A stretch of DNA of 64,000 nt from Haplodiscus bocki (Eukaryota), in assembly GCA_965655095.1 (NCBI GenBank), contig OZ296653.1:9920001-9984000 (forward strand), in the 5' to 3' direction. Both the position numbers and the translations under genes were made by a program. The notes below the pieces were generated by a model. The model had not been told where the DNA came from. It saw only the letters and a list, made by a program, of their open reading frames with translations, and did not search any database. Of the stretch, positions 1 through 17,683 are shown in pieces (position 1 is the stretch's first letter; each line of letters starts with the position of its first letter).

Positions 1-296
1 CTGGATTCTCTTCTACCTAATCAGGTACATGTACACACGACTGCAAACAAGAGTTTATAAGTAAATTTTATTTCGAATCGTGCTCGTCAATGTTCACCTG
101 TGCTTTAACGCGATTTATCGTTTTGACGCTCCATCTAGAACCGTGTTGGCAAGAGTTTTCGAATATCCAGAGAACTTGATCTTTCATTGTTGTAGATCAT
201 CTGGTTGTCGGGCCCTCTGATTAAATTGCGTGCACTTTCGAATTGAAGCAGGTCTCAATTTCCATTTCGGGTTCTAGTTTGTCAAGCAGTAGGTAC

Positions 297-1310
297 TATA
301 GCAGCAGAAACTTTCTTAAAACCTAAATTAAATTTTCCTTCATTAAATTTTCTTTCTTAAAACTTGAACTAAATTTCATTTCTATTTTCGTCTGATTTAT
401 AAACAGCTCGCGCTGAGTCAAGTACCCTCGAGTGCTTTTGCTAAACAAAGCCCCTTTTCATAACAGTATTTTACAAACAACAAAATCCTCTTATCACTAC
501 TCTGTAATTTACATACAACACTCTTTCTATTCTTTCTTCTTACATGCAATAATCTTCCTTTATAACAAGTGTACAATTTAATCACATACGTAACGTTTCA
601 ACAACTTTAATACAACACATTTCTTATCATTGACATAAAATAACGTTTAATATTTTCCGTTATAATTCACTGCTAGTATTTTATTATAATATACACTCTC
701 CATAAATACTTCGCACAACAATTACATAGCAGTGCTGTACTTTCTGTTTTGTTTTCGTAACCCGCTGACCCTTACCCCTCATCCAGGCCCGCATTTAAAT
801 CAGTGCAAATTTCGAAGTCTCTCTCTTAATCCTGACCAAAAATAATATCCGCCTGAAAATTCCTACTCATTCGTCGACAACAACACAACGAAAGAAGGAC
901 GACCCAGCAAACAGACGAACTCAGCCGCAACAGTTTCCAGCTCTTTCCCGAAGAAAAGAAGAAGCAAATCTCCTCTCTACAATTTGACAACCAGTCCTCC
1001 AGAATCTTCAACTTTCTCTATCCAGAAGTGCAATTGCCCCTCTTTGCCTCAACCAACAAAAGACATTATGTAAGCGTATAATTTATTTAAACTTTACTTC
1101 AAAAATATCTTCCTTTTTCTAATTAAAATTCTTTCCCAAAAAGCCAAAAACATTTTGTATTCACTTGAGATATCCCGCTAGCAACCACCAAACCAAAAAC
1201 ACCTAAATAGTAATTTTAGAAATTACTGAAGTACCATTTCCAATAACAGTCGTCCTCCGCATCCAAAACTAATTTCTAGCGAACTGTTTTAAAAGCATAC
1301 GACTGTTACA
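297..1310 (+). repeat. 5' LTR of element 1 (1014 bp, TATAGCAG...CTGTTACA)
   Basis: Direct repeat of 14130-15141. Visible differences are one TC dinucleotide indel (~820) and gcaacc vs gcatcc (~1184). Confidence 0.97.
1068..1075 (+). promoter_or_regulatory. Putative splice donor in LTR (AT|GTAAGC)
   Basis: GTAAG consensus at 1070; no ATG between 547 and 1067; phase matches the acceptors at 10269 and 13034. Confidence 0.7.
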
Positions 1311-1313
1311 AAA

Positions 1314-1331
1314 TGGTGACAGGAGTGGGAT
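1314..1331 (+). promoter_or_regulatory. Primer-binding site, tRNA-Leu-like
   Basis: TGGTGACAGGAGTGGGAT, 3 nt after the LTR; the complement ATCCCACTCCTGTCACCA resembles tRNA-Leu 3' ends. Confidence 0.85.
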
Positions 1332-1474
1332 ACCTCAAGTGAAAGGTCGTTTAAAAACGATCCGCGTGCGATTTTCGAAAATTGTAAAAGTGATTTAGTT
1401 TTTCCCCTTTCTTAGCTTTGGCCCAAGACCTTCGCCCACTGTTTTTCTTGTCACTGAATTTCAGTGCCCGCCAG

Positions 1475-1556
1475 CTAAGATCCTCTTCACCGGACTGTGT
1501 CCGAGCCTAGTTTTCCTAAGATCCTCTTCACCGGACTTTGTCCGAGCCTAGTTTCT
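1475..1556 (+). repeat. 2 x 41-bp tandem repeat in the 5' leader (again at ~3243-3324)
   Basis: ctaagatcctcttcaccggact(g/t)tgtccgagcctagttt repeated. Confidence 0.9.
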
Positions 1557-1714
1557 CCAGCTTCGTGCTGTGTATTCCGCGTTATGCGAGTTCTGGCAAG
1601 ACCCGCTAAGATGGCCCTTAAGTTTTAAGGATCTCACGTGAGTACTAGCTAAAACTTCAATTTTTCTTGAAATTTTTTTTGTACATTTTTGCTTTTATTA
1701 TCCCTTTTCCTTTA

Positions 1715-1984
1715 ATGTCCGTTCAGTTTTGTGCGCATACATCACCCCATGCCCGAGTTTTTTCTGTGAGTCCACCTTCACCCCCACCAGCGTACCGACC
1801 CCTGCAAAACCGTTTCCCGATCATCAGTACAACCTGCCTTTTCAACATTTTTCTCGCACTGACTGTCATTACGCTACTCCTACTGATAGCCGCCATAACC
1901 GGATTAGCTTTCGAAGTTCACGAAACCAGAAAACAGTGTTTCCGCGCAGTAAACGCTAAATTTTCAACAAAAGACACCTTTTGA
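1715..1984 (+). CDS. Putative small single-pass membrane protein in leader (89 aa from ATG; copy 1)
   Basis: PPPAY motif, hydrophobic FNIFLALTVITLLLLIAAITGLAF, then ETRKQCFR. Confidence 0.4.
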   Translation: MSVQFCAHTSPHARVFSVSPPSPPPAYRPLQNRFPIISTTCLFNIFLALTVITLLLLIAAITGLAFEVHETRKQCFRAVNAKFSTKDTF

Positions 1985-2431
1985 GTAGAATTTGTAATTC
2001 CGATGTATCTTTTTGGTTTTCCTGTGTCAACCACTACGAACACGTTACCTAAAGAAATTTTTATTCCCTGTTATTTCTGTCAAGTCCGCACACATCAAAT
2101 CCCAATCGCTTTTCGGCCCGAGTCCTCTTTTACACCGCATCAATTGAGTATTCACTATCGACTTGAAGGAATTCATTACCACCAACACAGTGAGACGCAC
2201 CCACTGGTTCAATTTTTCCCCAACACGAACCATCCCAACCACATTAAGTCCACAAGTAGTTTCTTCTTCCCAATCCTAACTCAAATCTGGAGAATTTATA
2301 TTGAATTCTTGTCGCACTACTTTACTGAACCCCTTGCGATCGTGTACCCAGGTAGTGGTCCCCTCAACTTGATGACCTCAGCCGCTAATAATTTGAAGTA
2401 GTTTGATTTCCTTTGAGTTTTTTTTATCACT

Positions 2432-3166
2432 ATGTCGACAACCGTCGCTACGGCAACGACCACCACCGCCACCATTACAAGTGCAGGAGGAACCACTTCT
2501 AGCACGCCTACCTCCTCCACTGCTACCACCAGTGCAACAAGTACCCCAGTTTCGTCGACCGCAACTAGCTCAACGCCTACTGCAACCCTAGGCACTGGTG
2601 CTGCCGCACCTTGCACGCCGTTCGCGACACCTTTTGGCCCCGGAGGTGCCCCTTTTGTAACTCCTTTGCCCTCATGCCTTATGCCAGAAAGTTTCACCGG
2701 TTCTGGTGATTTTGAGGACTACCTACAGCAATTTAACACTGCTGCCTTACTTTCTGGTTGGTTTTCACCAACCCATGACAACAGGCCACATTATTTCGCC
2801 CTTCGGCTGCGAGAAAATGCCCTACACTTCTACACAACGCTTTCTGCAGCCCAACAAACTGACTTCAACTTGTTAGTTGATGCCTTCCGGCAGAACTATA
2901 CAACGAATGTCGAAATACTGAAAGCAAGATTGAAAGCTGCCCGACAGCAACCCAATCAAGATATTTCTGCCTTTTTGTGTGACATTAGAACACTCGCGCG
3001 ACGCGCCTATCGCGCTTTTCCTCACTTAGTAGAACAAATTGTCCTGACTAGTTTCATCGAAGGCCTACGACTGTTACAAAATGGTGACAGGAGTGGGATA
3101 CCTCAAGTGAAAGGTCGTTTAAAAACGATCCGCGTGCGATTTTCGAAAATTGTAAAAGTGATTTAG
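2432..3166 (+). pseudogene. gag: Truncated gag copy fused to U5/PBS sequence
   Basis: Matches gag up to SFIEGL (one G/E difference), then reads through the duplication junction. Confidence 0.9.
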
Positions 3167-3482
3167 TTTTTCCCCTTTCTTAGCTTTGGCCCAAGACCTT
3201 CGCCCACTGTTTTTCTTGTCACTGAATTTCAGTGCCCGCCAGCTAAAATCCTCTTCACCGGACTGTGTCCGAGCCTAGTTTTCCTAAGATCCTCTTCACC
3301 GGACTTTGTCCGAGCCTAGTTTCTCCAGCTTCGTGCTGTGTATTCCGCGTTATGCGAGTTCTGGCAAGACCCGCTAAGATGGCCCTTAAGTTTTAAGGAT
3401 CTCACGTGAGTACTAGCTAAAACTTCAATTTTTCTTGAAATTTTTTTTGTACATTTTTGCTTTTATTATCCCTTTTCCTTTA

Positions 3483-3752
3483 ATGTCCGTTCAGTTTTGT
3501 GCGCATACATCACCCCATGCCCGAGTTTTTTCTGTGAGTCCACCTTCACCCCCACCAGCGTACCGACCCCTGCAAAACCGTTTCCCGATCATCAGTACAA
3601 CCTGCCTTTTCAACATTTTTCTCGCACTGACTGTCATTACGCTACTCCTACTGATAGCCGCCATAACCGGATTAGCTTTCGAAGTTCACGAAACCAGAAA
3701 ACAGTGTTTCCGCGCAGTAAACGCTAAATTTTCAACAAAAGACACCTTTTGA
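3483..3752 (+). CDS. Putative small single-pass membrane protein in leader (copy 2)
   Basis: Identical translation to copy 1, inside the duplication. Confidence 0.4.
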   Translation: MSVQFCAHTSPHARVFSVSPPSPPPAYRPLQNRFPIISTTCLFNIFLALTVITLLLLIAAITGLAFEVHETRKQCFRAVNAKFSTKDTF

Positions 3753-4199
3753 GTAGAATTTGTAATTCCGATGTATCTTTTTGGTTTTCCTGTGTCAACC
3801 ACTACGAACACGTTACCTAAAGAAATTTTTATTCCCTGTTATTTCTGTCAAGTCCGCACACATCAAATCCCAATCGCTTTTCGGCCCGAGTCCTCTTTTA
3901 CACCGCATCAATTGAGTATTCACTATCGACTTGAAGGAATTCATTACCACCAACACAGTGAGACGCACCCACTGGTTCAATTTTTCCCCAACACGAACCA
4001 TCCCAACCACATTAAGTCCACAAGTAGTTTCTTCTTCCCAATCCTAACTCAAATCTGGAGAATTTATATTGAATTCTTGTCGCACTACTTTACCGAACCC
4101 CTTGCGATCGTGTACCCAGGTAGTGGTCCCCTCAACTTGATGAACTCAGCCGCTAATAATTTGAAGTAGTTTGATTTCCTTTGAGTTTTTTTTATCACT

Positions 4200-5420
4200 A
4201 TGTCGACAACCGTCGCTACGGCAACGACCACCACCGCCACCATTACAAGTGCAGGAGGAACCACTTCTAGCACGCCTACCTCCTCCACTGCTACCACCAG
4301 TGCAACAAGTACCCCAGTTTCGTCGACCGCAACTAGCTCAACGCCTACTGCAACCCTAGGCACTGGTGCTGCCGCACCTTGCACGCCGTTCGCGACACCT
4401 TTTGGCCCCGGAGGTGCCCCTTTTGTAACTCCTTTGCCCTCATGCCTTATGCCAGAAAGTTTCACCGGTTCTGGTGATTTTGAGGACTACCTACAGCAAT
4501 TTAACACTGCTGCCTTACTTTCTGGTTGGTTTTCACCAACCCATGACAACAGGCCACATTATTTCGCCCTTCGGCTGCGAGGAAATGCCCTACACTTCTA
4601 CACAACGCTTTCTGCAGCCCAACAAACTGACTTCAACTTGTTAGTTGATGCCTTCCGGCAGAACTATACAACGAATGTCGAAATACTGAAAGCAAGATTG
4701 AAAGCTGCCCGACAGCAACCCAATCAAGATATTTCTGCCTTTTTGTGTGACATTAGAACACTCGCGCGACGCGCCTATCGCGCTTTTCCTCACTTAGTAG
4801 AACAAATTGTCCTGACTAGTTTCATCGAAGGCCTGAGCGATGCAACGCTTCGATGGGAACTTAGAAAGTCCAAACCAGCTACAGCTGATGATGCTCTAGC
4901 CCTGGCCATGGAATTGAATTCTTTCCTGGAAATTGAGAAAGGAGCCCCATTAACAAGCAAAATGGCCGAGACCAGCGTAAACGCGATCTCCCGTGAAACT
5001 CCTGAGCCACCCACCAAAGAGTGGATGGACGAGCTTGTTCGAACGCTAACGGACGGAATCAAGAACTCCATGCCTAAGCCGAGCCAAGAAGGATCCCGAC
5101 AGCGTAATAGCACGCCAAATCGCAACCAACCTTCTCGGTCAAACAGTACCGATTCACAAGGAACCCGAACGGTCCGTTTTCAAAACAATTCGAACGAAAG
5201 AAGAAATAACAGCGGCCGAGACAATAACTGGCGCGGACCCAACCGTCAAAATACGAAGTCTAACCGATCGAATGACAACAAAAACAGCTCCAAAGGACCT
5301 TGCAAACAATGTAAACGCGAAAATCATGCCTCAAACGAATGCAAAGCGTGTTTCAAGTGTGGAAAGATTGGACACTTCCGCAATGAGTGCCGAAGTAACA
5401 CTCCCAACAATTTAAACTGA
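4200..5420 (+). CDS. gag: Gag (Thr/Ser-rich N-terminus, capsid-like region, two CCHC zinc knuckles)
   Basis: CKQCKRENHASNEC and CFKCGKIGHFRNEC; position between PBS and pol. Confidence 0.95.
   Translation: MSTTVATATTTTATITSAGGTTSSTPTSSTATTSATSTPVSSTATSSTPTATLGTGAAAPCTPFATPFGPGGAPFVTPLPSCLMPESFTGSGDFEDYLQQFNTAALLSGWFSPTHDNRPHYFALRLRGNALHFYTTLSAAQQTDFNLLVDAFRQNYTTNVEILKARLKAARQQPNQDISAFLCDIRTLARRAYRAFPHLVEQIVLTSFIEGLSDATLRWELRKSKPATADDALALAMELNSFLEIEKGAPLTSKMAETSVNAISRETPEPPTKEWMDELVRTLTDGIKNSMPKPSQEGSRQRNSTPNRNQPSRSNSTDSQGTRTVRFQNNSNERRNNSGRDNNWRGPNRQNTKSNRSNDNKNSSKGPCKQCKRENHASNECKACFKCGKIGHFRNECRSNTPNNLN
5411..5417 (+). promoter_or_regulatory. -1 ribosomal frameshift slippery site T TTA AAC
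   Basis: In gag phase directly before the TGA; the -1 frame is open into pol; downstream gtctacgc...gcgcagac can pair. Confidence 0.85.
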
Positions 5421-8400
5421 GAACGTCTACGCCAGAGGGTCAACGCGCAGACAAAGACACTCCCCCAGGCCCACAAATTGAAACATTGAATTCTGTTGTT
5501 GATCACCGAAGTGTGTTCATTCAAATAACAATTTTTGATCGCATAATCGAAGCGATATGCGACAGTGGAGCAAGTGTGTCATGCCTTAGTAGTGAAATCT
5601 ATGATGCCCTCAAATTGAAACATTCTTTGAGATTGGAACCTGCCCTGAGACAACTTAAAGCTGCAAATCAATTGCCTATTGAGACGCGAGGCGTCGTACG
5701 CCTCCCTATAAGTTTAGGCGGAAGAAAATTTGAACATAATTTTCATGTTTTGTCTAAGTCGGAGGCCGATTGCCTCATAGGACTCGATTTTTTGGAAGAT
5801 CACCAATGTGATCCACTTTTTTCGCAGAAGAAATTGCGAGTGAATGATGATACTTTTGTCCCATTATATCACAAAGTTTATACCATACAAACTGATCAAG
5901 TCTTCCGAGTTGCTTCCACTGACAACGTTTGGATCCCAGCAGGTCATTCGATGATCATACCAGCCCATATCCCAGGATGGAAGCGCCCACCAATAGAGTT
6001 GGCCGCCGTATTCGAGCCGCATGAACGGTTCAAGGTAGACAAAGAGGTCAGTGCTGACCATGTCTTGTTTAATTTCTCCGAGGAAACAATCCCGGTGATG
6101 GTAACAAATACTGGGGATGAAGCGGTCATGATACATAAAGACACTACATTGGGACAATCCGAACTAGTCGCAACGGATAAAATTCAAAACATTAGTACAT
6201 TGAAAAGCCGCAAAAGCCCAAAACTAACCGACAAAAAGGATGCCAAGTACGATTTGAAACTTGTCAAAAACTCTATCGATACTGGTATTTCCCAGGAAGC
6301 AAAAGCAAAGTTCTTTAAACTAATCAATGAGTTTTCTGATGTGTTCTCGAAAAATGAATGGGACATTGGCCAATGCGATGTAACCGCCCACAAGATTCAA
6401 GTAGAACCCGGATCGCGACCAATTAAACTCCCCAACAGAAGAATGCCCTTACATTACAAGGACGATCTACAGGAAAAGATCGATGCTTTCCTAGAAAAGA
6501 AGCTAATCACGCCTTGTCATAGCCCATATAGTGCACCGGCTATGCTCGTCCCGAAGAAAAACGGTAAACTGCGTTTAGTAATAGACTACCGGCAGTTGAA
6601 TAAACAAACAATCAAGTCCTGTTGGCCCATTCCATCCATAGAAGAAATCTTTGACACCTTAGAAGGAAGTGAATTCTTTACCACGATTGATATGTCGTGG
6701 GGTTTCTACCAGCTCCCAATGGCTGAAGAAAGTCAAGATTATACCGCTTTTAGCACGCCTTTCGGATCTTTCAAATGGCTCCGAATGCCTATGGGACTGA
6801 CTGGTAGCCCGAATACTTTTCAAAGCTTGATGGAACAGGTTCTAGTTGGCCTGACCTGGAAGACAACAGTCCCTTATTTAGATGATTGTATCATCTTCTC
6901 TTCTACGGCTGAAGAACACATTGAAAGATTAAGAGAAGTTCTTGAACGGTTTCGCTCTGCGAATCTAAAAATAAACCCAACAAAATGTGAATTTTTTCGA
7001 ACTCGCGTCCCCTTTCTTGGCCATATCATCAGCAAAAATGGTCTAGAGGCGGACCCGGACAAAATTGCTGCCGTTAAAAAGTTTCCCATCCCTACAAATC
7101 CGACCGAAGTAAAATCTTTTCTTGGTTTATGTTCTTACTACCGTCGTTATGTGCAAAATTTTGCTGACATAGCCCGACCACTCCACAAAGCCAGTGAAGT
7201 AACTATAAATTTCAATTGGACACCCGAAGCCCAAGATGCTTTTGAAACTCTGAAATCTCGATTAACAACTACGCCCATTTTGGCTTTTCCAATGATGAAA
7301 GAACCTTTCATCCTGTACACCGACGCTAGCCTAACGGCTATGGGCGCTGTCTTGTCGCAAGTACAAGATGGACAGGAGCGTGCCATCTGCTACGCCTCCA
7401 AAGCTTTCTCGAAAGCCCAAACTAGATATTCTGCGACTAAAAGAGAGTTGTTAGCCGTCGTTAACTTCACACGACACTTCAAACATTACTTGCTTGGTCA
7501 GAAATTCACAATTATCACTGATCATCGCGCCCTACAATGGCTCCATAACTTCAAGGACCCAGATGCACTAACCGCCCGGTGGCTTGAAAAACTTGCCGCT
7601 TTCGACTACGAGGTAGTGCATAGGCCCGGAAAAACAATTGGCCATGCCGATGGTCTATCCCGAACACCACTTAGAGCATTTAATGCAATCGCAACTGAAG
7701 ACCCAGCTGCAGATGCGCCTGAAGAAGACCAAGAATGGCCCAACCGCACGAATGAAAGTCCACCTGATCCCAAACATTTCCAATATTCGGAGATCCAAGG
7801 CGATGTACTGCAATCAACTGACTCCATTGCGCACTGTATTTCAGCTGACTTCAAGCTAGGAGCAGGAATCGCTCGAAGCATTAAGCGACGCTTTCCAACG
7901 CAGTACCCCGACAAAGAAGCCATCGCTAGCGAAGTCATTTGGCCGCAATGGATCCCCGAATCGCAACGCTTCGTGTATCATTTAACAACAAAAGTGCGTT
8001 ATTTCCATCAACCAACGTACAAGGCATTGAGATTATCTCTAGAGGCTATGAAAAACCACGCTGAAAGCAAAAAAGTTTTGCGTATTAGCATGCCCCAGAT
8101 AGGTTGTGGCCTTGATAAACTTGATTGGAGTAAAGTTCGAAAATTGATTAAAGAAGTTTTCCGCCCTACCAACATACAGATCATCGTGTTTCTAAAGCCC
8201 TTAAAAGAACCGCCACGCGCAGGTCAAAACCCAGTTAACTCCTCTGATAATGCAGTTGCAGCAGAAACGCCTAATATTTCCGAAACGTTGACTTCCCTCG
8301 CATCGGCACAGAGAGCCGACCCAGCATTGAAGAATCTTTTTCAATGGGTCATACGTGGTACACCACCAAGTACCCACGCGTTACAAGGACTGCCGCGAGC

Positions 8401-10210
8401 AACATGGCAATTGGTCAACGAATTCCGAAGTCTGAAGATCATCAATGACGTTCTATGTAGAGAATTCACCCACAAAGGACGCCCATTGTACTATCAACAA
8501 CTCATACCTGCGTCATTAGTACCCCAAGTCCTAAATTCAATCCACTCATCGACCACTGGAGGTCACCTAGGAATATTCAAAACTGTAGAAAAAGTACGTG
8601 AACGTTTCTACTGGCCTGGTTTCCAAGAGGATGTGAAATTATTCATCAATCGTTGCGAACAATGTCAAAAAAGAGCCAACCCACCCAAGACCCATCGACA
8701 TTCTTTGGTCGAATGGACCCCAAGCTATCCGTTTCATCATATCGGCATTGATTTTATGGGTCCCTTACCATTGTCGAACGGTAACCAACACATTCTTTTA
8801 ATTGGCGATCATTTTTCGAAGTGGTACGAAGCGATTCCACTTCCCGACCAAACTGCTTCTACCACAGCTACGGCTCTTCTTGAAAATTGGATATGTCGAT
8901 TTGGATGCCCCCACAGTATCCATAGCGATCAAGGTCGTAACTTCGAATCAAAACTTTTTAAAAGTCTGAATCAAGCTTTGCAAGTTGACAAGACCCGAAC
9001 AACAGCCTTCCGGCCCCAGTCAAACGCGGTTGTGGAACGGATGAACCGTACGTTGCAATCAATGCTTGCCAAATGCGTCAACGATGAACAAAGTAACTGG
9101 TCACAACAGTTACCGTATGTCATGATGGCATATCGTACCTCGGTTCACGAATCCACAGGGTACACTCCACATTTTCTTGTCTACGGACAGGAAGTCTGCC
9201 TTCCTATTGATTTCATGTATCCAAATCCGAGTGATCAACCCCCAGCCGACCTCCATGAATTTGTGTCTGCCCGACAAGTCAGATTTCAAAAGGCGTACGA
9301 TTCGGCTCGTACAGCCCTGAATTTCAATCAGCGACGCAGAAACGCCCATTACAATCGAAAGGTCCATGGACCCACCTATCAAGTCAATCAAAAGGTTCTA
9401 CTACACAATCCCGTTGTCCCAGTTGGAAAGTCACCAAAGTTCTTTAGCCCATGGAAAGGTCCATATGTCATTTTACAATGCCTCAATGATGTGACCTACC
9501 GCATTCAAGAAATTGCAACTCAAAAAGAACTTGTTGTTCATTATGACCGACTGAAGTTATTCCATGAACCCCCACCGACCTCGAATGTACCAACGCGTGA
9601 TAAAAGAAATCCGAAAAACATATCTCACCCAAAACCTCAGCAAAAAGAACCACCAATCCCCGAGTACGACCACGATCAATGCACCTGGCATTATCCGTAC
9701 CATACCGTCCCTTCAGCAACCACTTGTTCTCGTGGCGTTGCTTGCACAACCCCGCCTGCTACGCCTGCACCAGCAACTACTCCAGTTGGTTCCCCCAAAC
9801 CTGTACTACCGAGTCCCTCTTCTTCCTATTCTGGAGCTACAGCACCCTATAGCCATGGCTCTCCCAGCACACCGAAGACAACCACTTCTCTCCGTTCAGG
9901 CACACCTACACCTGAACCTCAAACATCTGCAGAATCACCAGCTCACTCCCGAAGCCTTCCTAGCAGCCCTTCTACGCCGTCTTCTGTGAGATCAAAACCA
10001 TGGTTCCGCGAAGTCATTGACAATGCTTCTCGTACTCTTCAATTTGGTGATGCACCAACTCAAGCCCAACCTCAACGTAACCTCCGCAGTAGTACAAAAG
10101 AACAACGCAAAGCCCAACCATTATGGAAAGCAAAACTACCTCCTGACCTAAGTGATTTCTATTCCCCCGCCAGCTCGAAGAAGAAAAAGAAAAGTTCGCC
10201 CACTTTATAA
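5411..10210 (+). CDS. pol: Pol: aspartic protease, RT, RNase H, macrodomain, integrase (expressed as Gag-Pol)
   Basis: AICDSGAS; YLDD; LYTDAS...TDH...HADGLSR; HHCC, IDFMG/HSDQG/VERMNR, WKGPY; no internal stops. Confidence 0.97.
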   Translation, partial: FKLRTSTPEGQRADKDTPPGPQIETLNSVVDHRSVFIQITIFDRIIEAICDSGASVSCLSSEIYDALKLKHSLRLEPALRQLKAANQLPIETRGVVRLPISLGGRKFEHNFHVLSKSEADCLIGLDFLEDHQCDPLFSQKKLRVNDDTFVPLYHKVYTIQTDQVFRVASTDNVWIPAGHSMIIPAHIPGWKRPPIELAAVFEPHERFKVDKEVSADHVLFNFSEETIPVMVTNTGDEAVMIHKDTTLGQSELVATDKIQNISTLKSRKSPKLTDKKDAKYDLKLVKNSIDTGISQEAKAKFFKLINEFSDVFSKNEWDIGQCDVTAHKIQVEPGSRPIKLPNRRMPLHYKDDLQEKIDAFLEKKLITPCHSPYSAPAMLVPKKNGKLRLVIDYRQLNKQTIKSCWPIPSIEEIFDTLEGSEFFTTIDMSWGFYQLPMAEESQDYTAFSTPFGSFKWLRMPMGLTGSPNTFQSLMEQVLVGLTWKTTVPYLDDCIIFSSTAEEHIERLREVLERFRSANLKINPTKCEFFRTRVPFLGHIISKNGLEADPDKIAAVKKFPIPTNPTEVKSFLGLCSYYRRYVQNFADIARPLHKASEVTINFNWTPEAQDAFETLKSRLTTTPILAFPMMKEPFILYTDASLTAMGAVLSQVQDGQERAICYASKAFSKAQTRYSATKRELLAVVNFTRHFKHYLLGQKFTIITDHRALQWLHNFKDPDALTARWLEKLAAFDYEVVHRPGKTIGHADGLSRTPLRAFNAIATEDPAADAPEEDQEWPNRTNESPPDPKHFQYSEIQGDVLQSTDSIAHCISADFKLGAGIARSIKRRFPTQYPDKEAIASEVIWPQWIPESQRFVYHLTTKVRYFHQPTYKALRLSLEAMKNHAESKKVLRISMPQIGCGLDKLDWSKVRKLIKEVFRPTNIQIIVFLKPLKEPPRAGQNPVNSSDNAVAAETPNISETLTSLASAQRADPALKNLFQWVIRGTPPSTHALQGLPRATWQLVNEFRSLKIINDVLCREFTHKGRPLYYQQLIPASLVPQVLNSIHSSTTGGHLGIFKTVEKVRERFYWPGFQEDVKLFINRCEQCQKRANPPKTHRHSLVEWTPSYPFHHIGIDFMGPLPLSNGNQHILLIGDHFSKWYEAIPLPDQTASTTATALLENWICRFGCPHSIHSDQGRNFESKLFKSLNQALQVDKTRTTAFRPQSNAVVERMNRTLQSMLAKCVNDEQSNWSQQLPYVMMAYRTSVHESTGYTPHFLVYGQEVCLPIDFMYPNPSDQPPADLHEFVSARQVRFQKAYDSARTALNFNQRRRNAHYNRKVHGPTYQVNQKVLLHNPVVPVGKSPKFFSPWKGPYVILQCLNDVTYRIQEIATQKELVVHYDRLKLFHEPPPTSNVPTRDKRNPKNISHPKPQQKEPPIPEYDHDQCTWHYPYHTVPSATTCSRGVACTTPPATPAPATTPVGSPKPVLPSPSSSYSGATAPYSHGSPSTPKTTTSLRSGTPTPEPQTSAESPAHSRSLPSSPSTPSSVRSKPWFREVIDNASRTLQFGDAPTQAQPQRNLRSSTKEQRKAQPLWKAKLPPDLSDFYSPASSKKKKKSSPTL
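7778..8194 (+). other. TARG1/OARD1 (Poa1p-like) macrodomain inside Pol, between RNase H and integrase
   Basis: GDVL..DSIAHCISADFKLGAGIA...YHLTTK...PTYKALRLSLEAMKNH...ISMPQIGCGLDKLDW..V..LIKEVF follows the TARG1 motif series. Confidence 0.93.
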
Positions 10211-10269
10211 CTTTCACTCCTTTCAGAACGCTAATTTCACACCTTTTACCCCTCATATCGTTCTTTTAG

Positions 10270-12595
10270 GCTTCCTTTCCTACTTTCACTTGTCCTTCCC
10301 AATGGCCCGCCTCTTTGTTACACTGTGACCCACTACTCGACTCATCTCAACGATCAGCCAGAAGTTCCAGTCTTCAAGAAAGGCGCTGCCTTCCTTTTCA
10401 AGTGTCACGCAGTCACTTCCGAAAGTGAGAGCAAAGTTCGAGTGTTCTCCCCGTTCCCGAAAATCCCGGATGTCAATCTTACTGGAGCTGAAGAATTGTT
10501 GAGCCTAGCGAAAATACGAATAACCGGAATTGGTGGCATGTATGCCCAAAAAATTTGTGAATTCCAAGAAATCAACAAAACATATGGTTTATTAATGACA
10601 CAGTTGAAGGATCGCGTGGAATTGATCAAGCTTGAAGTGAAACAAGCAACAGATGAGCAAGGAAAGCTCGCAGACGTAATGAAGTCTTTTCTCCCGAAAC
10701 AGTATCAGAGGAACGTGGCGACGCTTCCACGTTCGAAACGATTTATTGGCGCAGTAGCTGCTCTTGCAGCAGGTGCCGGATTGATCCTGGGAGACCCGTT
10801 GAAAGAAGCTGCATGTACAGCTGTCTCGATTTTTAACTTGTGCGATGACACAAGCCGTTTGTCCCAAGACGTGGACCAGATCCTGAAAACGCAGGAAGAA
10901 ACAATAGCGACCTTGCAACGTGTCCAGTCAGCCAATGATGAGAACTTCTTCCTACTGGGTAATGAAGTCCGCGAAACGCAACAAAATGTTAAAAACCTTC
11001 GTGATGCCGTGAATGATCACCTACAGGTTCTCCATGATCGAAAAAATGGAATTCAAGGAGATTTAATTCAACATAAAGAATGTCAACGAAGACAAGCTCA
11101 ACATTCCCTCTTCCTCCAAGAGATTAGATATACCATATCTCATTTGGGTACCTTGTATACTCACATAAAGTCTTACCAAGCTGCGTTCTACGCCTACAAG
11201 ATTAACTTGTTCTCGACGATCTCGTCCCTTGCTAGTGGCCAAATAACCCCCCAGTTCCTCCTACCCCAAGAAATCGCTGACATTGTACGAACACTGTCAG
11301 AAGAAGAGAGTTATCGTGGTACAAAACTTACCCCCGCCATACAGCCTGGCTTCGAAGCTGTCTATTATGAGATACAACTCGTTTTAGAAGTCACGTTAAT
11401 TCCGCGCGGTATATCAGTTGTACTTGGTGTACCAATGAACTCCAAGTCTTCCACTTTCAACGTGTACCATGCTACCCCGCTGTATCAACCGAACGGTGAC
11501 AACAAGACAGCCTCCTTGTTCCAGCTCGCAAAGCCTTTCTTGGCTGTGGCTACTGACGATTCTAGATACGCCGAATTGGATAGTTCCACCTTACAACAAT
11601 GTTCAGGTAACAATCGGATCAGACTTTGTCGCAAAGGTTTCTCAACCACAACTGATGACACCCTCCTATGCCTGAGTTCTTTGATGTTCGATTATGCCAT
11701 CCCAGCATTGCGTAACTGCCCCGCCAATTCTGTGCTTTTACCTGACGCGCCACAAGCTTTTTATTTGGCCGAAGGATTGTATCATGTCATCTCCCGTGAA
11801 CCACTTCTTCACATGAAAAACGCCAGTGATATACATGGTGTCAGTGTTTCAATGATCCCTTGTCACGCCTGCATTTTGAGACCCAGTTGCCACAGTACCC
11901 TAACCCTGAATCAAGGTGATCTAGTTCTTGAACCGGATATGGACTACTGTTCGACGAGCCCAGAGCCCTTCTTTGCCACGATCGAACTGATCCCATCATT
12001 AGAACAAGTCTTCAAACATGTCCCACACTCCAATCATGTCTTTCACGCCTATTCGTTGGGCGAAGCACGTCATTCTGTCCTCAGCAGTGTTCGTATGGAA
12101 TTAGCAGAACTCCCGGACGTGCGACGCATGTCAGTTGATTCAATCGACCAACTAGCACACCCGATTGCGCAGTATTACTCATCAATTTCTCCGGCAACAT
12201 CACAAGCCCTCGAGTCATATCTCCCCTTTCGCACTGCCGTCTTGTTCTCGACTGCTTCGATTACCCTTTCTTTATTGACTTTCACTATCAGTTTTACCTT
12301 GTTCCGCCGTCAATGGAAACGACTTTTTCTTCATCCACACAAGTTCTTCAAAAGTACAAATGGACGACTCTTGGATGTCACGGACAGTCATGAAACTCCA
12401 GATACAGCCATTGATGACGCTTCTGTTTTCATCCAGCTCAGTTTGGACGAATTCAACGCATTAAAAACACTTGCCAGTGAAACCCTGAGACACCCACCCC
12501 ATAATAACTCATATACCACATGCAATGTCCCTCATATTCCTACCCGTGTCTACCCAGACATCACAGCCCCTCATTATTCCGAGTCTACACCATAA
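10270..12595 (+). CDS. env: Env, class I fusion (F-like) glycoprotein; start probably supplied by splicing
   Basis: Signal-like LPFLLSLVL; furin site RSKR (10730-10741) then fusion peptide FIGAVAALAAGAGLILG; heptad repeat; Cys-rich region; TM AVLFSTASITLSLLTFTISFTLF followed by RRQWKR. Confidence 0.9.
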
Positions 12596-12664
12596 TCTAA
12601 CTTAACTCCTTAACATCTTGTTGTTCTAACATATTATACACGTCATATTTAAAATCAGAACACC

Positions 12665-12816
12665 CTGCACTTTCGTGCCCCCTTTAGTACGGTTCCGTAC
12701 TCGGCTTGCCTAGATTCACATCATGGCCCAGCTTTTGCACGTTTCCGTGCCTGCCCTCTTGTACGTTTCCGTACCTGCCCAGCTTTTGTTGGCCCGTTTG
12801 CACGTGTCCGTGCCCA
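12665..12816 (+). repeat. Short imperfect direct repeats between env and ORF4
   Basis: ttgcacgtttccgtgcctgccc / ttgtacgtttccgtacctgccc / ttgcacgtgtccgtgccc. Confidence 0.7.
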
Positions 12817-13008
12817 CTTCTTGCTCAGACTTTGATCTGACCCTTGACAAATTGAGACCAATCATGTCTCCCCTGTCCTATGATTTCAGCGTTGACAGTA
12901 TACGTATCCGTATACGCGTACCACAAAAAAACTCAACAATAAGGACTCGTTTCTTCTCTTCTCCCTTTCCCCTCCCTCTTTTTCTTCTTTTTTACAATAA
13001 ATTGTGAT

Positions 13009-14052
13009 ATGTACTTATCATTTTTTTGTTTCAGGTTTCCTACTAAGCGTCCTTCTGGCTCCCCTCTATACACTTGCAGTGGCAAGGTTGCTGTAATCAA
13101 CCCGGGTGACATCGTCCACATTCTAGACGAGCGAGAATACCGTGTGCTGCGGATTAATCCACATTCTTCAACAGTTGTGCTTCGCCGGGTCGACGCAACG
13201 TCCAACCAACGCAGTTTCATGCGTCCTTCAACATCTGTCTGTCTACTACCCTCTTCTACCCGTGACGCCTCAGTCGAATGTAATGAACCAACCGATAATT
13301 GTATGTGCGAATTGACTCCGCCCCCAGTTCTTCCGGACGTTAACGATGGTTCTACACAGTGTAATCTCCCGGATGTTTGCGCCGCCTCTACACAATGCGA
13401 TTTTGAAGCAGATTCGTATGCCGCCTTCAAAAGTTCTCGATTCGACAGTGTAGATCGACTTGTCCAAGGCTTCGAAGAAGCCAAATTCTCTGCAAATGCT
13501 GCGTTCAAAGAGCTTTGTAACCAAGTTGACGCAGTAAATGAATTAAAAGCCCAAGTTTCACAACTCCAGCAACGAATAGCTACCCTAAATGACGAAAATG
13601 AGGCTCTTCTTAAACGAACATTTGAATTAACTGAAGATGTTTCAACCCTCACTGCTATTACCTCTACACATCGTCACCTACCTGCTCTGCAACGAATGTT
13701 CTTCCATCATCTACAACAACTTCCATTAACAACAAATCCAAACGAACATCCCCATAATCTCTTATTCCATGTAGTTGGATGTGCCCCCTCTTCTTCTCCG
13801 GAAATAATTCAAGAAAACATCAAATGCCTTCTTCAACAGCTGCACCCTGATAAAAATCCTTCTGTTCCTTCTTCTGTCAGCCAATACGTGCCCCTCGTCA
13901 CCATGGCTAAAACAATTCTTCTCAACAAGAACTTATTACCCACATACCGTTGTTGTGGCATGTTCGGAGTTACTAGACAACAAAATGGTCTTCGAACATG
14001 CAGAAAATGTGACCCCTTCTTACGGAAACTGGATGATTTAATGGACTTGTAA
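13009..14052 (+). CDS. Accessory ORF4: coiled-coil plus J-domain (HPD) protein; likely start at spliced AT|G (13035)
   Basis: 347-aa open frame inside the element; heptad stretch ~13500-13650; FHVVGC...IQENIKCLLQQLHPDKN...AKTILLN...TYRCCG aligns with the DnaJ J-domain. Confidence 0.8.
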   Translation: MYLSFFCFRFPTKRPSGSPLYTCSGKVAVINPGDIVHILDEREYRVLRINPHSSTVVLRRVDATSNQRSFMRPSTSVCLLPSSTRDASVECNEPTDNCMCELTPPPVLPDVNDGSTQCNLPDVCAASTQCDFEADSYAAFKSSRFDSVDRLVQGFEEAKFSANAAFKELCNQVDAVNELKAQVSQLQQRIATLNDENEALLKRTFELTEDVSTLTAITSTHRHLPALQRMFFHHLQQLPLTTNPNEHPHNLLFHVVGCAPSSSPEIIQENIKCLLQQLHPDKNPSVPSSVSQYVPLVTMAKTILLNKNLLPTYRCCGMFGVTRQQNGLRTCRKCDPFLRKLDDLMDL

Positions 14053-14095
14053 AGCACACTTTTTCAACTTCTTCCGCTCTTCACTACTTAATTGC

Positions 14096-14129
14096 TTTGC
14101 GGGACGCAAACCCAGTAAAATGAGAGCAG
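14096..14129 (+). promoter_or_regulatory. Pre-PPT hairpin and polypurine tract
   Basis: tttgcg-gga-cgcaaa stem-loop, then purine-rich aaaatgagagcag abutting the 3' LTR. Confidence 0.65.
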
Positions 14130-15141
14130 TATAGCAGCAGAAACTTTCTTAAAACCTAAATTAAATTTTCCTTCATTAAATTTTCTTTCTTAAAACTTGA
14201 ACTAAATTTCATTTCTATTTTCGTCTGATTTATAAACAGCTCGCGCTGAGTCAAGTACCCTCGAGTGCTTTTGCTAAACAAAGCCCCTTTTCATAACAGT
14301 ATTTTACAAACAACAAAATCCTCTTATCACTACTCTGTAATTTACATACAACACTCTTTCTATTCTTTCTTCTTACATGCAATAATCTTCCTTTATAACA
14401 AGTGTACAATTTAATCACATACGTAACGTTTCAACAACTTTAATACAACACATTTCTTATCATTGACATAAAATAACGTTTAATATTTTCCGTTATAATT
14501 CACTGCTAGTATTTTATTATAATATACACTCTCCATAAATACTTCGCACAACAATTACATAGCAGTGCTGTACTTTCTGTTTTGTTTTCGTAACCCGCTG
14601 ACCCTTACCCCTCATCCAGGCCCGCATTTAAATCAGTGCAAATTTCGAAGTCTCTCTTAATCCTGACCAAAAATAATATCCGCCTGAAAATTCCTACTCA
14701 TTCGTCGACAACAACACAACGAAAGAAGGACGACCCAGCAAACAGACGAACTCAGCCGCAACAGTTTCCAGCTCTTTCCCGAAGAAAAGAAGAAGCAAAT
14801 CTCCTCTCTACAATTTGACAACCAGTCCTCCAGAATCTTCAACTTTCTCTATCCAGAAGTGCAATTGCCCCTCTTTGCCTCAACCAACAAAAGACATTAT
14901 GTAAGCGTATAATTTATTTAAACTTTACTTCAAAAATATCTTCCTTTTTCTAATTAAAATTCTTTCCCAAAAAGCCAAAAACATTTTGTATTCACTTGAG
15001 ATATCCCGCTAGCATCCACCAAACCAAAAACACCTAAATAGTAATTTTAGAAATTACTGAAGTACCATTTCCAATAACAGTCGTCCTCCGCATCCAAAAC
15101 TAATTTCTAGCGAACTGTTTTAAAAGCATACGACTGTTACA
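14130..15141 (+). repeat. 3' LTR of element 1 (1012 bp)
   Basis: Repeat of 297-1310, followed by TSD GTAC. Confidence 0.97.
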
Positions 15142-16204
15142 GTACAAAGACAATTGAGTTTTCAAACTGTGATGCTGCTCCAACTCAATTTAATAACTTC
15201 AAGTAAGTTTGTTGACACTGATATACGAATTATGTCTGATCTGTTGAGGTAATCTTGGTTTTCAATAAAATAACCTTGACATAATTGATTCTGCTGTTTA
15301 CTTCCAAGTCGTAATCGAAATTATTAGTGGTTGGTGAACACGAGGCATATGTTATAGAAGTTATTCTTTGTTCTGGTTACTAGTCTGTACGCTGTGATAC
15401 AGTAATACTTTCCGATGCATGCCCTCTTGAGCCGTCAGTGTCGAGATGTCGTTAAAAGTTATCAAGCCTTGTCAAATTTCACAAAACTGGGTACAATGTT
15501 TCGGAGAAAGTCCAACTTTCTGCTTGTCTCTGATGTGAACTTTCAAACTTTTTTCCATTCATAGCGATTGTGACAACTGTTATTAACAAAAAGGATTTTT
15601 TTTCCATCAGGCGGTAGATTGGATACCAGCCGAACTTCAGAAAGAGGCTAAACTTAACACGAAGAGCTGTAGAAAATATGAAGCATGAAAAAAATGCATG
15701 AATGCTACAAAACTGGCGATCCGGTCAGCGGAATATGAGCATGACTAGCAACATTCCTTTTAATGTTGCGAAATTGTTATATACTGAAATGGATGCACTT
15801 CATAAAATGTTTGTTCATTTTTTTCAAGCTTCCAATCAATTACAGCTGTAGCGAAAAAAGAAGGCATTGTACCGCCACAATAATTTAAATACTCCTATGT
15901 TCAAAAACCTTGCTGGATTGCTTAGTTAAATTCACTGGACAATTTTAAACAAGAAACACATGCGAATTAAATTTACCCAATTTTAACACATGGCGTGGTC
16001 TAACACACGCGTTTCTGTCAACTTCGTTTAGACCGCTAATTATTCAATTCAATGGGGGTTTGGGGGAACTCCTTGGTTTTGGGGAATTAAATCTGCCAAT
16101 GGGCAAAATTTTTGAGTGGGGCAAAAATACACCAAATAGGTCAAAAATCTTTGAAAAGTGATGTGGGCTTCCGAAAAAACAGACTACTCACGTGGACAAA
16201 TGTT

Positions 16205-16519: not shown

Positions 16520-17314
16520 AACCCTGGTTACGCCGGCCGTCAAGAACTTCCTGAAAACTTGAAGATCATGTTCCGGACAGTTGCGATGATGGTTCCAGAC
16601 CGCGCCATTATCATCAGGGTGAAACTCGCCAGCTGTGGTTTCCTGGAAAACATTGACTTGTCTGGAAAATTTTACACTTTGTACAAACTGTGTGAAGAAC
16701 AACTCTCTAAACAAGTACATTACGATTTCGGATTACGTAATATCTTGTCGGTTCTGCGAACATTGGGATCCGAAAAAAGAAAAAGTCCGACTGACCCTGA
16801 AAATAAAACGGTCATGCGAGTTTTACGAGACATGAATCTTTCCAAACTCATTGACGAAGATGAAGGATTGTTCCAGTCACTTATCGACGACCTTTTCCCA
16901 GGAATGACCCTGGACACGAAAGGATACCCTGACTTGGAAAGAACAATTGACCGAATTGTAAACAACGCTGGCAATTTGGTCAACCATAAAGACTGGAACT
17001 TGAAAATAATTCAACTGTTCGAGACCCAAAGGGTGCGTTGGGGTATCATGACCCTAGGTCCCACAGGTGCGGGGAAGACAACCTGCATAAACACCTTATT
17101 GAAGTCTTTCACAGAGCAGGGAATCCCCCACAAGGAAATGCGCATGAATCCTAAAGCAATCACTGCTCCCCAGATGTTCGGCAGACTCGACGTGGCCACA
17201 AATGATTGGACAGATGGAATATTCTCAACACTTTGGCGCAAAACTCACAAAGCGCGGGAAAACGAGCACATCTGGCTGGTGCTGGACGGGCCCGTGGATG
17301 CCATCTGGATTGAG
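16520..17314 (+). CDS. Axonemal outer-arm dynein heavy chain (DNAH5/DNAH8-like) exon: end of AAA1 to AAA2
   Basis: tag|AAC CCT GGT ([15 protein letters not shown]), HYDFGLRN, Walker [20 protein letters not shown]|gtgaat. Confidence 0.95.
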
Positions 17315-17683
17315 GTGAATTGAAAACTTTTTCTTCTCTGCGCTCAGTTTCGTAAATAATTTTGAGAAAATGAAAATTTTGGCCAAATTTTGTCACTTTT
17401 TTCAAAGTTGTTTTGAATGTTACAAGGATGAATGGAATATATGCTCCAAGGGAAATTTTGTTTCTTCTGAAGTTTCATCTCTATATTTCTGTCAAAACCC
17501 TTGACTATATTTTGGGTACGTTTTTCGACTGAACTAAATAAATAACTCATGCAAAAGTCACCTTCACTCGCTCGAAAACCTTGAGCAAAACTTCGAGGCA
17601 GGTAAGGGACCGCATATCAAGATATTACGATGACTGAAACAGTCTAACTGAACATTCTGCAATATTTCTTTTCCTCATTCCAG

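What the first reader, a model, noticed from the sequence alone, without database searches (positions are those of the whole stretch)
13756..13959. Retrotransposon-encoded J-domain (Hsp40-like) with intact HPD
Seen: LFHVVGCAPSSSPEIIQENIKCLLQQLHPDKN...VTMAKTILLNKNLLPTYRCCG keeps DnaJ spacing (YYEILGV...IRKAYKRLAMKYHPDRN...IKEAYEVL...YDQYG), with HPD at 13843-13851. The basic residues of helix II are largely lost. Known: HPD stimulates Hsp70, and polyomavirus T antigens use a viral J-domain. Inference: it recruits Hsp70 for particle assembly/uncoating or to interfere with chaperone-dependent small-RNA silencing.
Basis: partly seen in the sequence, partly recalled or inferred. Interest (0 to 1): 0.8.

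Follow-up and report, generated by a model that had tools for sequence, protein, structure and literature searches.

The report
Retroelement accessory gene with a J-domain
A young, retrovirus-like mobile element in an unidentified animal-type genome carries a fourth gene with a genuine Hsp40-type J-domain, kept by selection across a whole clade of such elements, so these elements probably bring their own adaptor for the host Hsp70 chaperone.

Summary
Window 13756-13959 is residues 250-317 of a 347-codon ORF (13009-14052), and HPD lies at 13843-13851.

**J-domain.** The window copy scores below Pfam's cut-off (PF00226, E=4e-4). The family settles the question:
- 28 of 34 homologues hit PF00226.
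- A family profile hits solved J-domains (best 4.7e-8).
- The AlphaFold model superposes on J-domains at 1.1-2 Å.

**Conservation.** HPD-K is among the best-conserved positions. dN/dS is 0.17-0.27 in three close pairs. Between subfamilies, synonymous sites are saturated.

**Context.** The ORF sits inside an intact Ty3/gypsy-type element (297-15141; LTRs 99.7% identical; GTAC target duplication). It follows gag, pol and an envelope-like ORF3. The same order recurs in ten related loci, and the family spans four public datasets in all.

**Architecture.** The protein has an SH3-like β-barrel, a long coiled coil, the J-domain, and a Cys-containing tail.

**Caveats.**
- Helix II is not basic in this subfamily.
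- Hsp70 recruitment is inferred, and the client is unknown.
- Conserved splice-site-like motifs suggest spliced expression. The start codon is unresolved.
- The host taxon is unresolved.

I found no published retroelement J-protein.

The parts
293..296 (+). Target-site duplication GTAC, 5' copy. The 3' copy is at 15142-15145.
   Evidence: Sequence flanking both LTR ends.
297..1310 (+). 5' LTR.
   Evidence: Self-blastn: 297-1310 against 14130-15141, 99.7% identical. Boundaries.
1314..1330 (+). Primer-binding-site-like sequence starting TGG, three bases after the LTR.
   Evidence: Read directly from the sequence. The tRNA was not identified.
1292..4834 (+). Internal tandem duplication, 1292-3066 = 3060-4834. 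It covers the LTR end, PBS, leader and 5' part of gag.
   Evidence: Self-blastn at 99.7%. Duplicate truncated gag ORF at 2432-3166.
3403..3411 (+). 5' splice-site-like motif CAC|GTGAGT in the leader. Its duplicate is at 1635-1643.
   Evidence: Crude PWM scan. GT[GA]AGTAC is kept at the same place in L004, L011, L001 and L005 although the flanks are about 70% identical.
4200..5420 (+). gag (capsid-like domain plus CCHC zinc knuckle).
   Evidence: PF03732 at 2.7e-7 and PF00098 at 2.6e-5.
5486..10210 (+). pol: protease, RT, RNase H, TARG1-type macrodomain (7823-8191), integrase.
   Evidence: Pfam. Macrodomain E=6e-27 to OARD1 structure 4j5q.
10325..12595 (+). ORF3, envelope-like. It has RSKR followed by a hydrophobic Gly/Ala-rich stretch, a helical region and a C-terminal membrane anchor.
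   Evidence: Translation. 66-97% identical in L001, L003 and L004. Only a weak PF00523 hit, in the L003 copy, E=0.009. No PDB hit by sequence.
12950..13034 (+). Pyrimidine-rich tract ending in a conserved 3' splice-site-like ...TTTCAG|G.
   Evidence: DNA alignment of six loci. The motif is kept in five of six and the AG in all six, while upstream sequence diverges.
13009..14052 (+). ORF4, 347 codons: the J-domain accessory gene.
13063..13245 (+). ORF4 N-terminal SH3-like β-barrel, residues about 19-79.
   Evidence: AF2 on a 38-sequence alignment, block-mean pLDDT 87-91 over model residues 11-60. The Foldseek top hits are KOW and Tudor domains at E 0.012-0.1. No Pfam family.
13444..13719 (+). 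ORF4 helical region, residues 146-237: a coiled-coil-like long helix (146-219) plus a second helix (223-237).
   Evidence: AF2 helices 146-219 and 223-237, block-mean pLDDT 84-95 over residues 151-210. Weak hits to the zipper half of bZIP_1 in 15 of 34 members.
13756..13959 (+). ORF4 J-domain, residues 250-317. HPD is at 13843-13851.
13951..14049 (+). ORF4 C-terminal segment with conserved CC...CxxC and a hydrophobic/acidic tail ending LMDL.
   Evidence: Column conservation 0.76-0.97. C331 is invariant in the divergent set. The role is unknown.
14117..14129 (+). Purine-rich, polypurine-tract-like run abutting the 3' LTR.
   Evidence: Read directly from the sequence.
14130..15141 (+). 3' LTR.

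Best explanation
ORF4 is a functional accessory gene of an envelope-carrying Ty3/gypsy-type (errantivirus-like) endogenous retroelement. It encodes a class-C-type J-protein.

Shown:
- Homology to J-domains and a predicted J fold.
- A conserved HPD-K motif.
- Purifying selection on the gene.
- A fixed position after gag, pol and ORF3 in elements whose ORF4 proteins are only 30-69% identical to the window copy.

Inferred:
- The protein pairs through its long helix.
- Its SH3-like N-terminal barrel docks on a client.
- The HPD loop switches on the ATPase of host Hsp70, so Hsp70 is loaded onto that client.

My best guess for the client is the element's own nucleoprotein machinery: Gag or capsid assembly or disassembly, or activation of the reverse-transcription complex. 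This is by analogy with Hsp70/Hsp40 activation of the hepadnaviral reverse transcriptase.

The gene is probably expressed from a spliced subgenomic RNA. The start codon is not settled.
For: **J-domain.** Pfam E=4e-4 for the window copy. 28 of 34 homologues hit PF00226, best 2.5e-8. The profile against the PDB gives 4.7e-8, and 20 of its 21 hits are J-domains. AF2 and Foldseek give rmsd 1.1-2 Å to J-domains, including the DnaK-bound one, 5nro.

**HPD.**
- Intact in 37 of 45 close homologues; the other 8 are all single-sequence clusters.
- All nine clusters with at least 4 member sequences have HPD.
- H and D are kept in at least 90% of 21 divergent representatives, 20-69% identical.

**Selection.**
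- dN/dS is 0.27 (window/L010), 0.17 (L004/L011) and 0.26 (L001/L005).
- It is 0.18-0.45 over the J-domain plus tail and 0.12 for residues 250-315 alone in L001/L005.
- Between subfamilies, third-position differences are 0.6-0.7 against 0.14-0.3 at second positions.

**Synteny.** ORF4 follows the retroelement genes in L001-L006, L008, L010 and L011, and follows an ORF3-sized ORF in L009. These loci come from three datasets. A fourth, ERZ1742291, holds a family member on a short contig without neighbours.

**Family size.** 101 representatives at E<=1e-10.

**Other domains.** A domain for docking plus a helix for pairing is the usual build of a J-protein adaptor.

**Splice motifs.**

**Precedent.** A reverse transcriptase that needs Hsp70/Hsp40: PMC2094093.
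Against: - Helix II in the window's subfamily keeps one of five canonical basic positions and has net charge -1. This could weaken or retarget Hsp70 binding. The non-basic residues E269 and N270 are themselves conserved, which suggests specialisation.
- The window copy alone is below Pfam's gathering score.
- There is no expression, interaction or activity data.
- The client is a guess.
- The N-domain matches are weak (E 0.012 or worse).
- Pairing through the coiled coil is inferred from a single-chain model.
- In three loci no in-frame ATG precedes the conserved N-domain, and the leader exon supplies none in the window. How the protein starts is therefore open.
Confidence: 0.6

Rival explanations
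1. The domain keeps the J fold and the HPD letters but no longer drives Hsp70. It serves as a structural or protein-binding module in an accessory protein with another job, for example regulation or RNA export.
For: - Helix II is acidic or neutral in the window's subfamily and in most close relatives.
- The N-domain is more conserved than the J-domain between subfamilies: dN 0.16 against 0.28 for window/L004.
- The C-terminal tail is strongly conserved. By eye only, it fits a hydrophobic spacing seen in export signals.
Against: - HPD-K is among the most conserved positions (0.89-0.96). It is kept in subfamilies down to 20-30% identity, and the known role of that motif is Hsp70 activation.
- More divergent subfamilies have a more basic, canonical helix II.
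- DNAJC12-like cellular J-proteins, among the nearest non-family hits, also have a weakly basic helix II.
Confidence: 0.2
2. The J-protein targets host defence rather than the element's own particles. The Tudor/KOW-like barrel docks on a component of small-RNA silencing or another restriction pathway, and Hsp70 is used to dismantle or misdirect it.
For: - The Foldseek neighbours of the N-domain include SMN, TDRD3, TDRD1, Tudor-SN and Krimper Tudor domains.
- The same Pol carries a TARG1-type macrodomain. I read this as a counter-defence type of domain by analogy with RNA-virus macrodomains (own knowledge).
- A viral J-domain acting on DICER1 through HSC70 is on record for Merkel cell polyomavirus (PMC8567380).
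Against: - The structural matches are weak (E 0.012-0.1), and KOW domains score at least as well as Tudor domains.
- No aromatic cage was shown.
- There is no sequence match to any Tudor family.
- The idea is purely inferential.
Confidence: 0.13
3. ORF4 is a passenger: a host gene fragment picked up by one element lineage, carried along without function and decaying.
For: - Capture of host domains by this lineage is evident (macrodomain).
- Many copies in the database are truncated or have lost HPD.
Against: - dN/dS is 0.17-0.27, and synonymous sites are saturated between subfamilies while the protein stays alignable.
- The position and the multi-domain build are the same in lineages at 30-69% identity.
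- The ORF is intact in the youngest copy examined (window, LTRs 99.7% identical).
Confidence: 0.04
4. A chance ORF with a chance HPD.
For: The single-sequence Pfam score is below the curated cut-off.
Against: Every family-level test.
Confidence: 0.01

Closest known systems
Cellular class C (type III) J-proteins, e.g. DNAJC12- or DNAJC5-like
   Same: - A single J-domain with HPDKN.
- No G/F region and no CxxCxGxG zinc-finger repeats.
- The J-domain is combined with unrelated targeting domains.
- DNAJC5, DNAJC10, DNAJB8 and DNAJC12 are among the best PDB hits.
- A DNAJC12-like protein is among the first non-family hits of the big search. It shares the LGC start and a weakly basic helix II.
   Different: - The J-domain is near the C-terminus.
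- It is preceded by an orphan SH3-like barrel and a long coiled coil.
- It is encoded inside LTRs in many copies.
- No cellular donor could be named, and scores to different DNAJ classes are similar.
Polyomavirus large and small T antigens (viral J-domain)
   Same: A mobile or viral genome carries its own HPD J-domain, which in T antigens binds Hsc70 (reviews PMC11720896 and PMC5721967).
   Different: - The T-antigen J-domain is N-terminal and fused to a helicase/origin-binding protein or a PP2A-binding protein of a DNA virus.
- There is no sequence relationship beyond the J-domain, and no barrel or coiled coil.
- T antigens are not among the 50 best BFVD matches listed.
DnaJ-domain proteins of giant viruses, phages and baculoviruses
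   Same: They are the best structural matches among predicted viral proteins: Clandestinovirus, Hokovirus and mimivirus-like viruses, phages, and the nucleopolyhedrovirus Djbp and J-domain proteins.
   Different: All are DNA viruses. No reverse-transcribing virus or retroelement protein is among the 50 BFVD matches listed.
Envelope-carrying Ty3/gypsy elements of non-insect metazoans ('ancient errantiviruses', PMC13524379)
   Same: - LTRs, gag, and pol in the order PR-RT-RH-IN.
- A large ORF3 with a furin-type site, a fusion-peptide-like stretch and a membrane anchor.
- Many near-identical copies.
   Different: - That paper does not mention DnaJ, a J-domain, chaperones or a macrodomain.
- This clade has a fourth gene and a macrodomain in Pol.
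- Membership of their clades was not tested by phylogeny.
Additional ORFs captured by LTR retrotransposons (bdelloid rotifers, PMC5408684; plants, PMC7264820)
   Same: An extra gene downstream of pol that is not env, thought to play auxiliary roles in replication.
   Different: The discussion of the rotifer paper names a DEDDy exonuclease and an SGNH hydrolase/esterase. Its text has no DnaJ, J-domain or chaperone.

Membership tests
J-domain (Pfam PF00226 DnaJ) | Sequence match at Pfam's curated threshold. | tested here: inconclusive
   The window copy scores 20.8 bits against a 27.8-bit cut-off, E=4e-4. At family level, 28 of 34 members match at E<=0.01, best 2.5e-8. Many homologues carry a precomputed PF00226 hit. 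The family profile against solved J-domains gives 4.7e-8.
J-domain (Pfam PF00226 DnaJ) | Four-helix fold with the helix II-III hairpin. | tested here: met
   AF2 block-mean pLDDT 78-92 over residues 251-340. Nearly all of the 50 Foldseek PDB hits listed are J-domains, rmsd 1.1-2.0 Å over 62-69 columns, TM up to 0.85 by target length.
J-domain (Pfam PF00226 DnaJ) | HPD tripeptide in the loop between helices II and III. | tested here: met
   H279-P280-D281 at 13843-13851. Conserved at 0.89-0.91, with the following K at 0.96.
J-domain (Pfam PF00226 DnaJ) | Basic face of helix II. | tested here: not met
   The window subfamily has one of five canonical basic positions and net charge -1. Divergent subfamilies have 2-4.
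J-domain (Pfam PF00226 DnaJ) | HPD-dependent stimulation of Hsp70 ATPase. | not testable with these tools
   Needs a biochemical assay.
Class A / class B J-proteins (DNAJA, DNAJB) | G/F-rich linker after the J-domain (classes A and B) and CxxCxGxG zinc-finger repeats (class A). | tested here: not met
   Only 30 residues follow the J-domain. They hold CC and one CxxC, and there is no G/F region. By exclusion the protein is class C.
LTR retrotransposon, Ty3/gypsy (Metaviridae) | Two LTRs with a target-site duplication, a PBS and a polypurine tract. | tested here: met
   LTRs of about 1.0 kb (1014 and 1012 nt) at 99.7% identity, GTAC duplication, TGG-starting PBS-like sequence, and a purine run before the 3' LTR.
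LTR retrotransposon, Ty3/gypsy (Metaviridae) | gag with capsid and CCHC; pol in the order protease, RT, RNase H, integrase. | tested here: met
   Pfam hits in that order.
Errantivirus-like (envelope-carrying) element | ORF3 is a viral fusion glycoprotein. | tested here: inconclusive
   An RSKR site, a hydrophobic stretch and a C-terminal anchor are seen in the translation. There is only a weak PF00523 hit, in one homologue, E=0.009. No PDB sequence hit. No structure was predicted.
Tudor / KOW (SH3-like barrel) domains | Five-stranded SH3-like β-barrel. | tested here: inconclusive
   The AF2 model is confident, block-mean pLDDT 87-91. Foldseek matches to Spt5 KOW and to SMN/TDRD3 Tudor domains are only E 0.012-0.1, with TM 0.45-0.50 by query.
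Tudor / KOW (SH3-like barrel) domains | Family sequence signature (aromatic cage for Tudor; KOW motif). | tested here: not met
   No Pfam Tudor or KOW hit in any of 38 members at E<=1. The aromatic cage was not examined in the model.
Polyomavirus T-antigen J-domain | N-terminal J-domain fused to T-antigen-specific regions. | tested here: not met
   The J-domain here is C-terminal, and no T antigen appears among the 50 best BFVD matches listed.

The most novel reading that the evidence does not exclude
A clade of retrovirus-like elements carries a two-part host-manipulation kit. One part is a dimeric adaptor that joins a Tudor/KOW-like reader barrel to a J-domain, using host Hsp70 to take apart a defence complex (for instance the small-RNA silencing machinery) or to drive capsid remodelling. 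The other part is a TARG1-type ADP-ribose hydrolase built into Pol. As far as I could find, this would be the first J-protein described in any reverse-transcribing element.
Probability: 0.2. Interest if true: 0.85.

Novelty: new variant of a known kind. Interest (0 to 1): 0.62.

Why it matters
Retroviruses and retrotransposons are known to depend on host chaperones. Among viruses, self-encoded J-domains are described in DNA viruses: polyomaviruses, giant viruses, baculoviruses and phages.

A selected, multi-domain J-protein gene in a whole clade of envelope-carrying LTR elements would show that reverse-transcribing elements can also carry their own Hsp70 adaptor. It would give a defined protein with which to ask which step of the retroelement life cycle, or which host defence, is chaperone-limited.

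The neighbouring macrodomain in Pol suggests that this clade has captured several host domains. It is therefore a good place to study how accessory genes arise in retroelements.

Tried and rejected
**Negative or blank searches**
- NCBIfam gave only coiled-coil noise.
- Rfam found nothing in the window.
- Pattern scans of IMG/VR and JGI metagenome contigs found no relatives.

**Host taxon**
- The dynein exon search gave only 66% identity to the best named protein (a fish DNAH5), plus a 93% unnamed hit.
- The Pol search gave only unnamed close relatives.
- The sample accessions appear in no paper.
- The taxon is left unresolved.

**Donor of the J-domain**
- Scores to DNAJB8, DNAJC5, DNAJC10 and DNAJC12 are too close to choose between them.
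- The DNAJC12-like lead is not a result.

**Origin of the N-domain**
- By eye it resembled the element's own integrase C-terminal module.
- hhalign gave probability 2.4%, so I dropped the idea.

**Start codon**
- A crude donor scan found one conserved leader motif.
- It supplies no in-frame ATG.
- The splice model therefore stays incomplete.

**Other checks**
- bZIP hits cover only the zipper half of the profile, so I make no DNA-binding claim.
- The ORF near the 3' end of the second, degraded element (30184-31155) is not a J-protein.
- TRF missed the long-period array; self-blast found it.
- NG86 and YN00 fail between subfamilies because synonymous sites are saturated. I used codon-position differences and close pairs instead.
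- One call failed on frame.

- The window has no N.

Full report
**Observation**

The interval 13756-13959 is residues 250-317 of a 347-codon ORF on the + strand (13009-14052). HPD is at 13843-13851, as stated.

On its own, this copy matches Pfam PF00226 (DnaJ) at E=4.1e-4 and 20.8 bits. That is under the 27.8-bit curated cut-off, but the match spans profile positions 3-56 of 63. The eight best phmmer hits among solved structures are all J-domains. The window has no N, and nothing in it or in the fetched loci was taken for human.

**Family evidence**

The word-index search found 54 homologues at 37-98% identity. All are unnamed, and many carry a precomputed PF00226 hit.

- In a 34-sequence alignment, H279, P280, D281 and K282 are each kept in at least 90% of sequences.
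- Scanned one by one, 28 of 34 members hit PF00226, best 2.5e-8.
- A profile of the alignment hits 20 solved J-domains, best DNAJB8 at 4.7e-8.
- AlphaFold2 on the alignment gives block-mean pLDDT of 84-95 over residues 151-210 (the long helix 146-219). The blocks covering the J-domain and tail, residues 251-340, have means of 78-92.
- Foldseek against the PDB returns almost only J-domains, at rmsd 1.1-2.0 Å over 62-69 columns. These include the DnaK-bound J-domain 5nro.

Both were run, and neither refutes the finding.

**HPD and helix II**

- Among 45 close homologues that cover the motif, 37 have HPD. The eight exceptions are all single-sequence clusters.
- All nine clusters with four or more member sequences have HPD.
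- The exhaustive HMMER search found 284 representatives at E<=1e-3, 101 at E<=1e-10 and 42 at E<=1e-30.
- The 21-sequence alignment of divergent representatives, 20-69% identical to the window copy, contains 14 near-full-length members. These keep the same domain order, and H and D are kept in at least 90% of the 21.
The window's subfamily keeps one of the five canonical basic positions and has net charge -1. More divergent subfamilies have two to four basic residues.
- The non-basic residues E269 and N270 are themselves conserved. This looks like specialisation rather than decay.

**Selection**

- Three close pairs give dN/dS of 0.27 (window/L010), 0.17 (L004/L011) and 0.26 (L001/L005).
- Over the J-domain plus tail the values are 0.18-0.45. 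For residues 250-315 alone in L001/L005 the value is 0.12.
- Between subfamilies, third codon positions differ at 0.6-0.7 of sites, against 0.14-0.3 at second positions. Synonymous distances are saturated.

The gene is therefore maintained as a protein.

**Context**

- ORF4 lies inside an LTR element spanning 297-15141. The LTRs are 297-1310 and 14130-15141, 99.7% identical.
- The element has a GTAC target-site duplication, a PBS-like TGG sequence after the 5' LTR, and a purine run before the 3' LTR.
- It encodes gag (capsid-like domain plus CCHC) and pol in the order protease, RT, RNase H, integrase.
- It also encodes a 756-residue ORF3. ORF3 has an RSKR site followed by a hydrophobic Gly/Ala-rich stretch, and a C-terminal anchor.
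- ORF3 has only a weak F0 fusion-glycoprotein hit, in one homologue (E=0.009), and no PDB hit by sequence. 'Envelope-like' is therefore an inference.
- ORF4 follows the retroelement genes in L001, L002, L003, L004, L005, L006, L008, L010 and L011. In L009 it follows a 699-residue ORF.
- These loci come from ERZ26859043, ERZ25074608 and the Logan assembly of SRR24961302. A further family member lies on a 2-kb contig of ERZ1742291, with no neighbours.

**Architecture**

- With a more diverse 38-sequence alignment, the N-terminal region folds confidently as a small all-β barrel, with block-mean pLDDT of 87-91 over model residues 11-60.
- Its best PDB neighbours are Spt5 KOW domains and the SMN, TDRD3, TDRD1, Tudor-SN and Krimper Tudor domains. 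The matches are only E 0.012-0.1, and there is no Pfam family.
- The long helix follows. It gives weak matches to the zipper half of bZIP_1 only.
- After the J-domain come a conserved CC...CxxC and a hydrophobic/acidic tail. Their role is unknown.
- There is no G/F region and no class-A zinc finger, so by exclusion this is a class-C J-protein.

**Expression**

- Conserved coding begins exactly at a pyrimidine tract ending ...TTTCAG|G (13024-13035). The motif is kept in five of six loci and the AG in all six, while upstream sequence diverges.
- L001, L005 and L003 have no in-frame ATG upstream of the conserved N-domain.
- A 5' splice-site-like GT[GA]AGTAC is conserved in the leader of both subfamilies examined. 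One decayed copy departs from it.
- This resembles retroviral subgenomic splicing. However, the leader exon gives no in-frame ATG in the window, so the start codon is unresolved.

**Mechanism**

- Shown: a selected J-domain gene that belongs to the element.
- Inferred: HPD-dependent recruitment of host Hsp70 to a client held by the N-terminal barrel, in a protein paired through its coiled coil.
- I favour the element's own assembly or reverse-transcription machinery as the client. The analogy is the Hsp70/Hsp40 activation of the hepadnaviral reverse transcriptase (PMC2094093).
- A counter-defence role is the main alternative. A viral J-domain acting on DICER1 through HSC70 is documented for Merkel cell polyomavirus (PMC8567380).
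- The non-basic helix II keeps open the rival that the domain no longer drives Hsp70.

**Comparison and novelty**

- Viral J-domains are known in polyomavirus T antigens (PMC11720896). By structure search they also occur in giant viruses, phages and baculoviruses. No reverse-transcribing element appears among the 50 BFVD matches listed.
- Five full-text searches, plus term look-ups in three of the papers they returned, found no retroelement J-domain. The papers checked include the survey of envelope-carrying Ty3/gypsy elements and the bdelloid study of captured ORFs. Absence from that library is not proof.
- No relatives were found in IMG/VR or JGI contigs.
- The host is unidentified. The flanking gene is a DNAH5/8-like axonemal dynein whose best named match is 66% identical. 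Close Pol relatives are all unnamed.
- I rate this a new variant of known kinds: a J-protein, and a retroelement accessory gene.

**Limits**

- There is no wet-lab or transcript evidence.
- The AlphaFold models rest on alignments of related element copies.
- dN/dS between element copies mixes selection on active lineages with neutral decay after insertion.
- I used profile HMMs and alignments only to compare copies.

Noticed in passing
window 7823-8191 (within pol, 5486-10210): Pol carries a TARG1/OARD1-type macrodomain between RNase H and integrase (E=6e-27 to human OARD1 structure 4j5q). Other unnamed Pol proteins with a macrodomain exist in public data (P0322, P0327, P0355, P0372, P0397, P0403). 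None of the 15 best-ranked papers of a five-term search (395 papers held at least two of the terms) mentioned both a macrodomain and an LTR retrotransposon.
   Followed up: partly
window 1292-3066 and 3060-4834: A 1.77-kb internal tandem duplication (99.7%) of the LTR end, PBS, leader and 5' part of gag. It gives a truncated second gag ORF at 2432-3166. It could be real or an assembly artefact; this was not resolved.
   Followed up: no
window 32594-64000: A tandem array with a period of about 1315 bp, at least 24 copies, 96-97.6% identical, running off the window end. TRF missed it because the period exceeds 500.
   Followed up: no
window about 22610-32137: A second, degraded LTR-type element. 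It has 440-bp repeats 90% identical at 22610-23047 and 31698-32137. It also has a CCHC knuckle (23409-24188), an integrase fragment (26451-27110) and an envelope-like fragment (30184-31155). No J-domain ORF was detected.
   Followed up: partly
window 16559-19159 (+): Exons of a DNAH5/8-like axonemal dynein heavy chain lie 1.4 kb downstream of the element, on the same strand. The best named match is 66% identical (a fish), and there is a 93% unnamed ENA match. The host taxon stays unknown.
   Followed up: partly
L004 10001-11020 vs L011 10001-11014: Synonymous distance between these two ORF4 copies is about 3.3 in the N-domain but 0.11 in the J-domain and tail. This suggests recombination between element subfamilies within the gene.
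   Followed up: no
window 12720-12830: The spacer between ORF3 and ORF4 holds three imperfect copies of a roughly 20-nt motif (GCACGTTTCCGTGCCTGCCC-like). I could not say whether it is a regulatory element.
   Followed up: no
window 10303-10329: ORF3 has no early ATG in its own frame. A short ATG-started ORF just upstream is in another frame, whereas the L001 and L003 copies of ORF3 have an N-terminal extension. How ORF3 starts in this copy is open.
   Followed up: no
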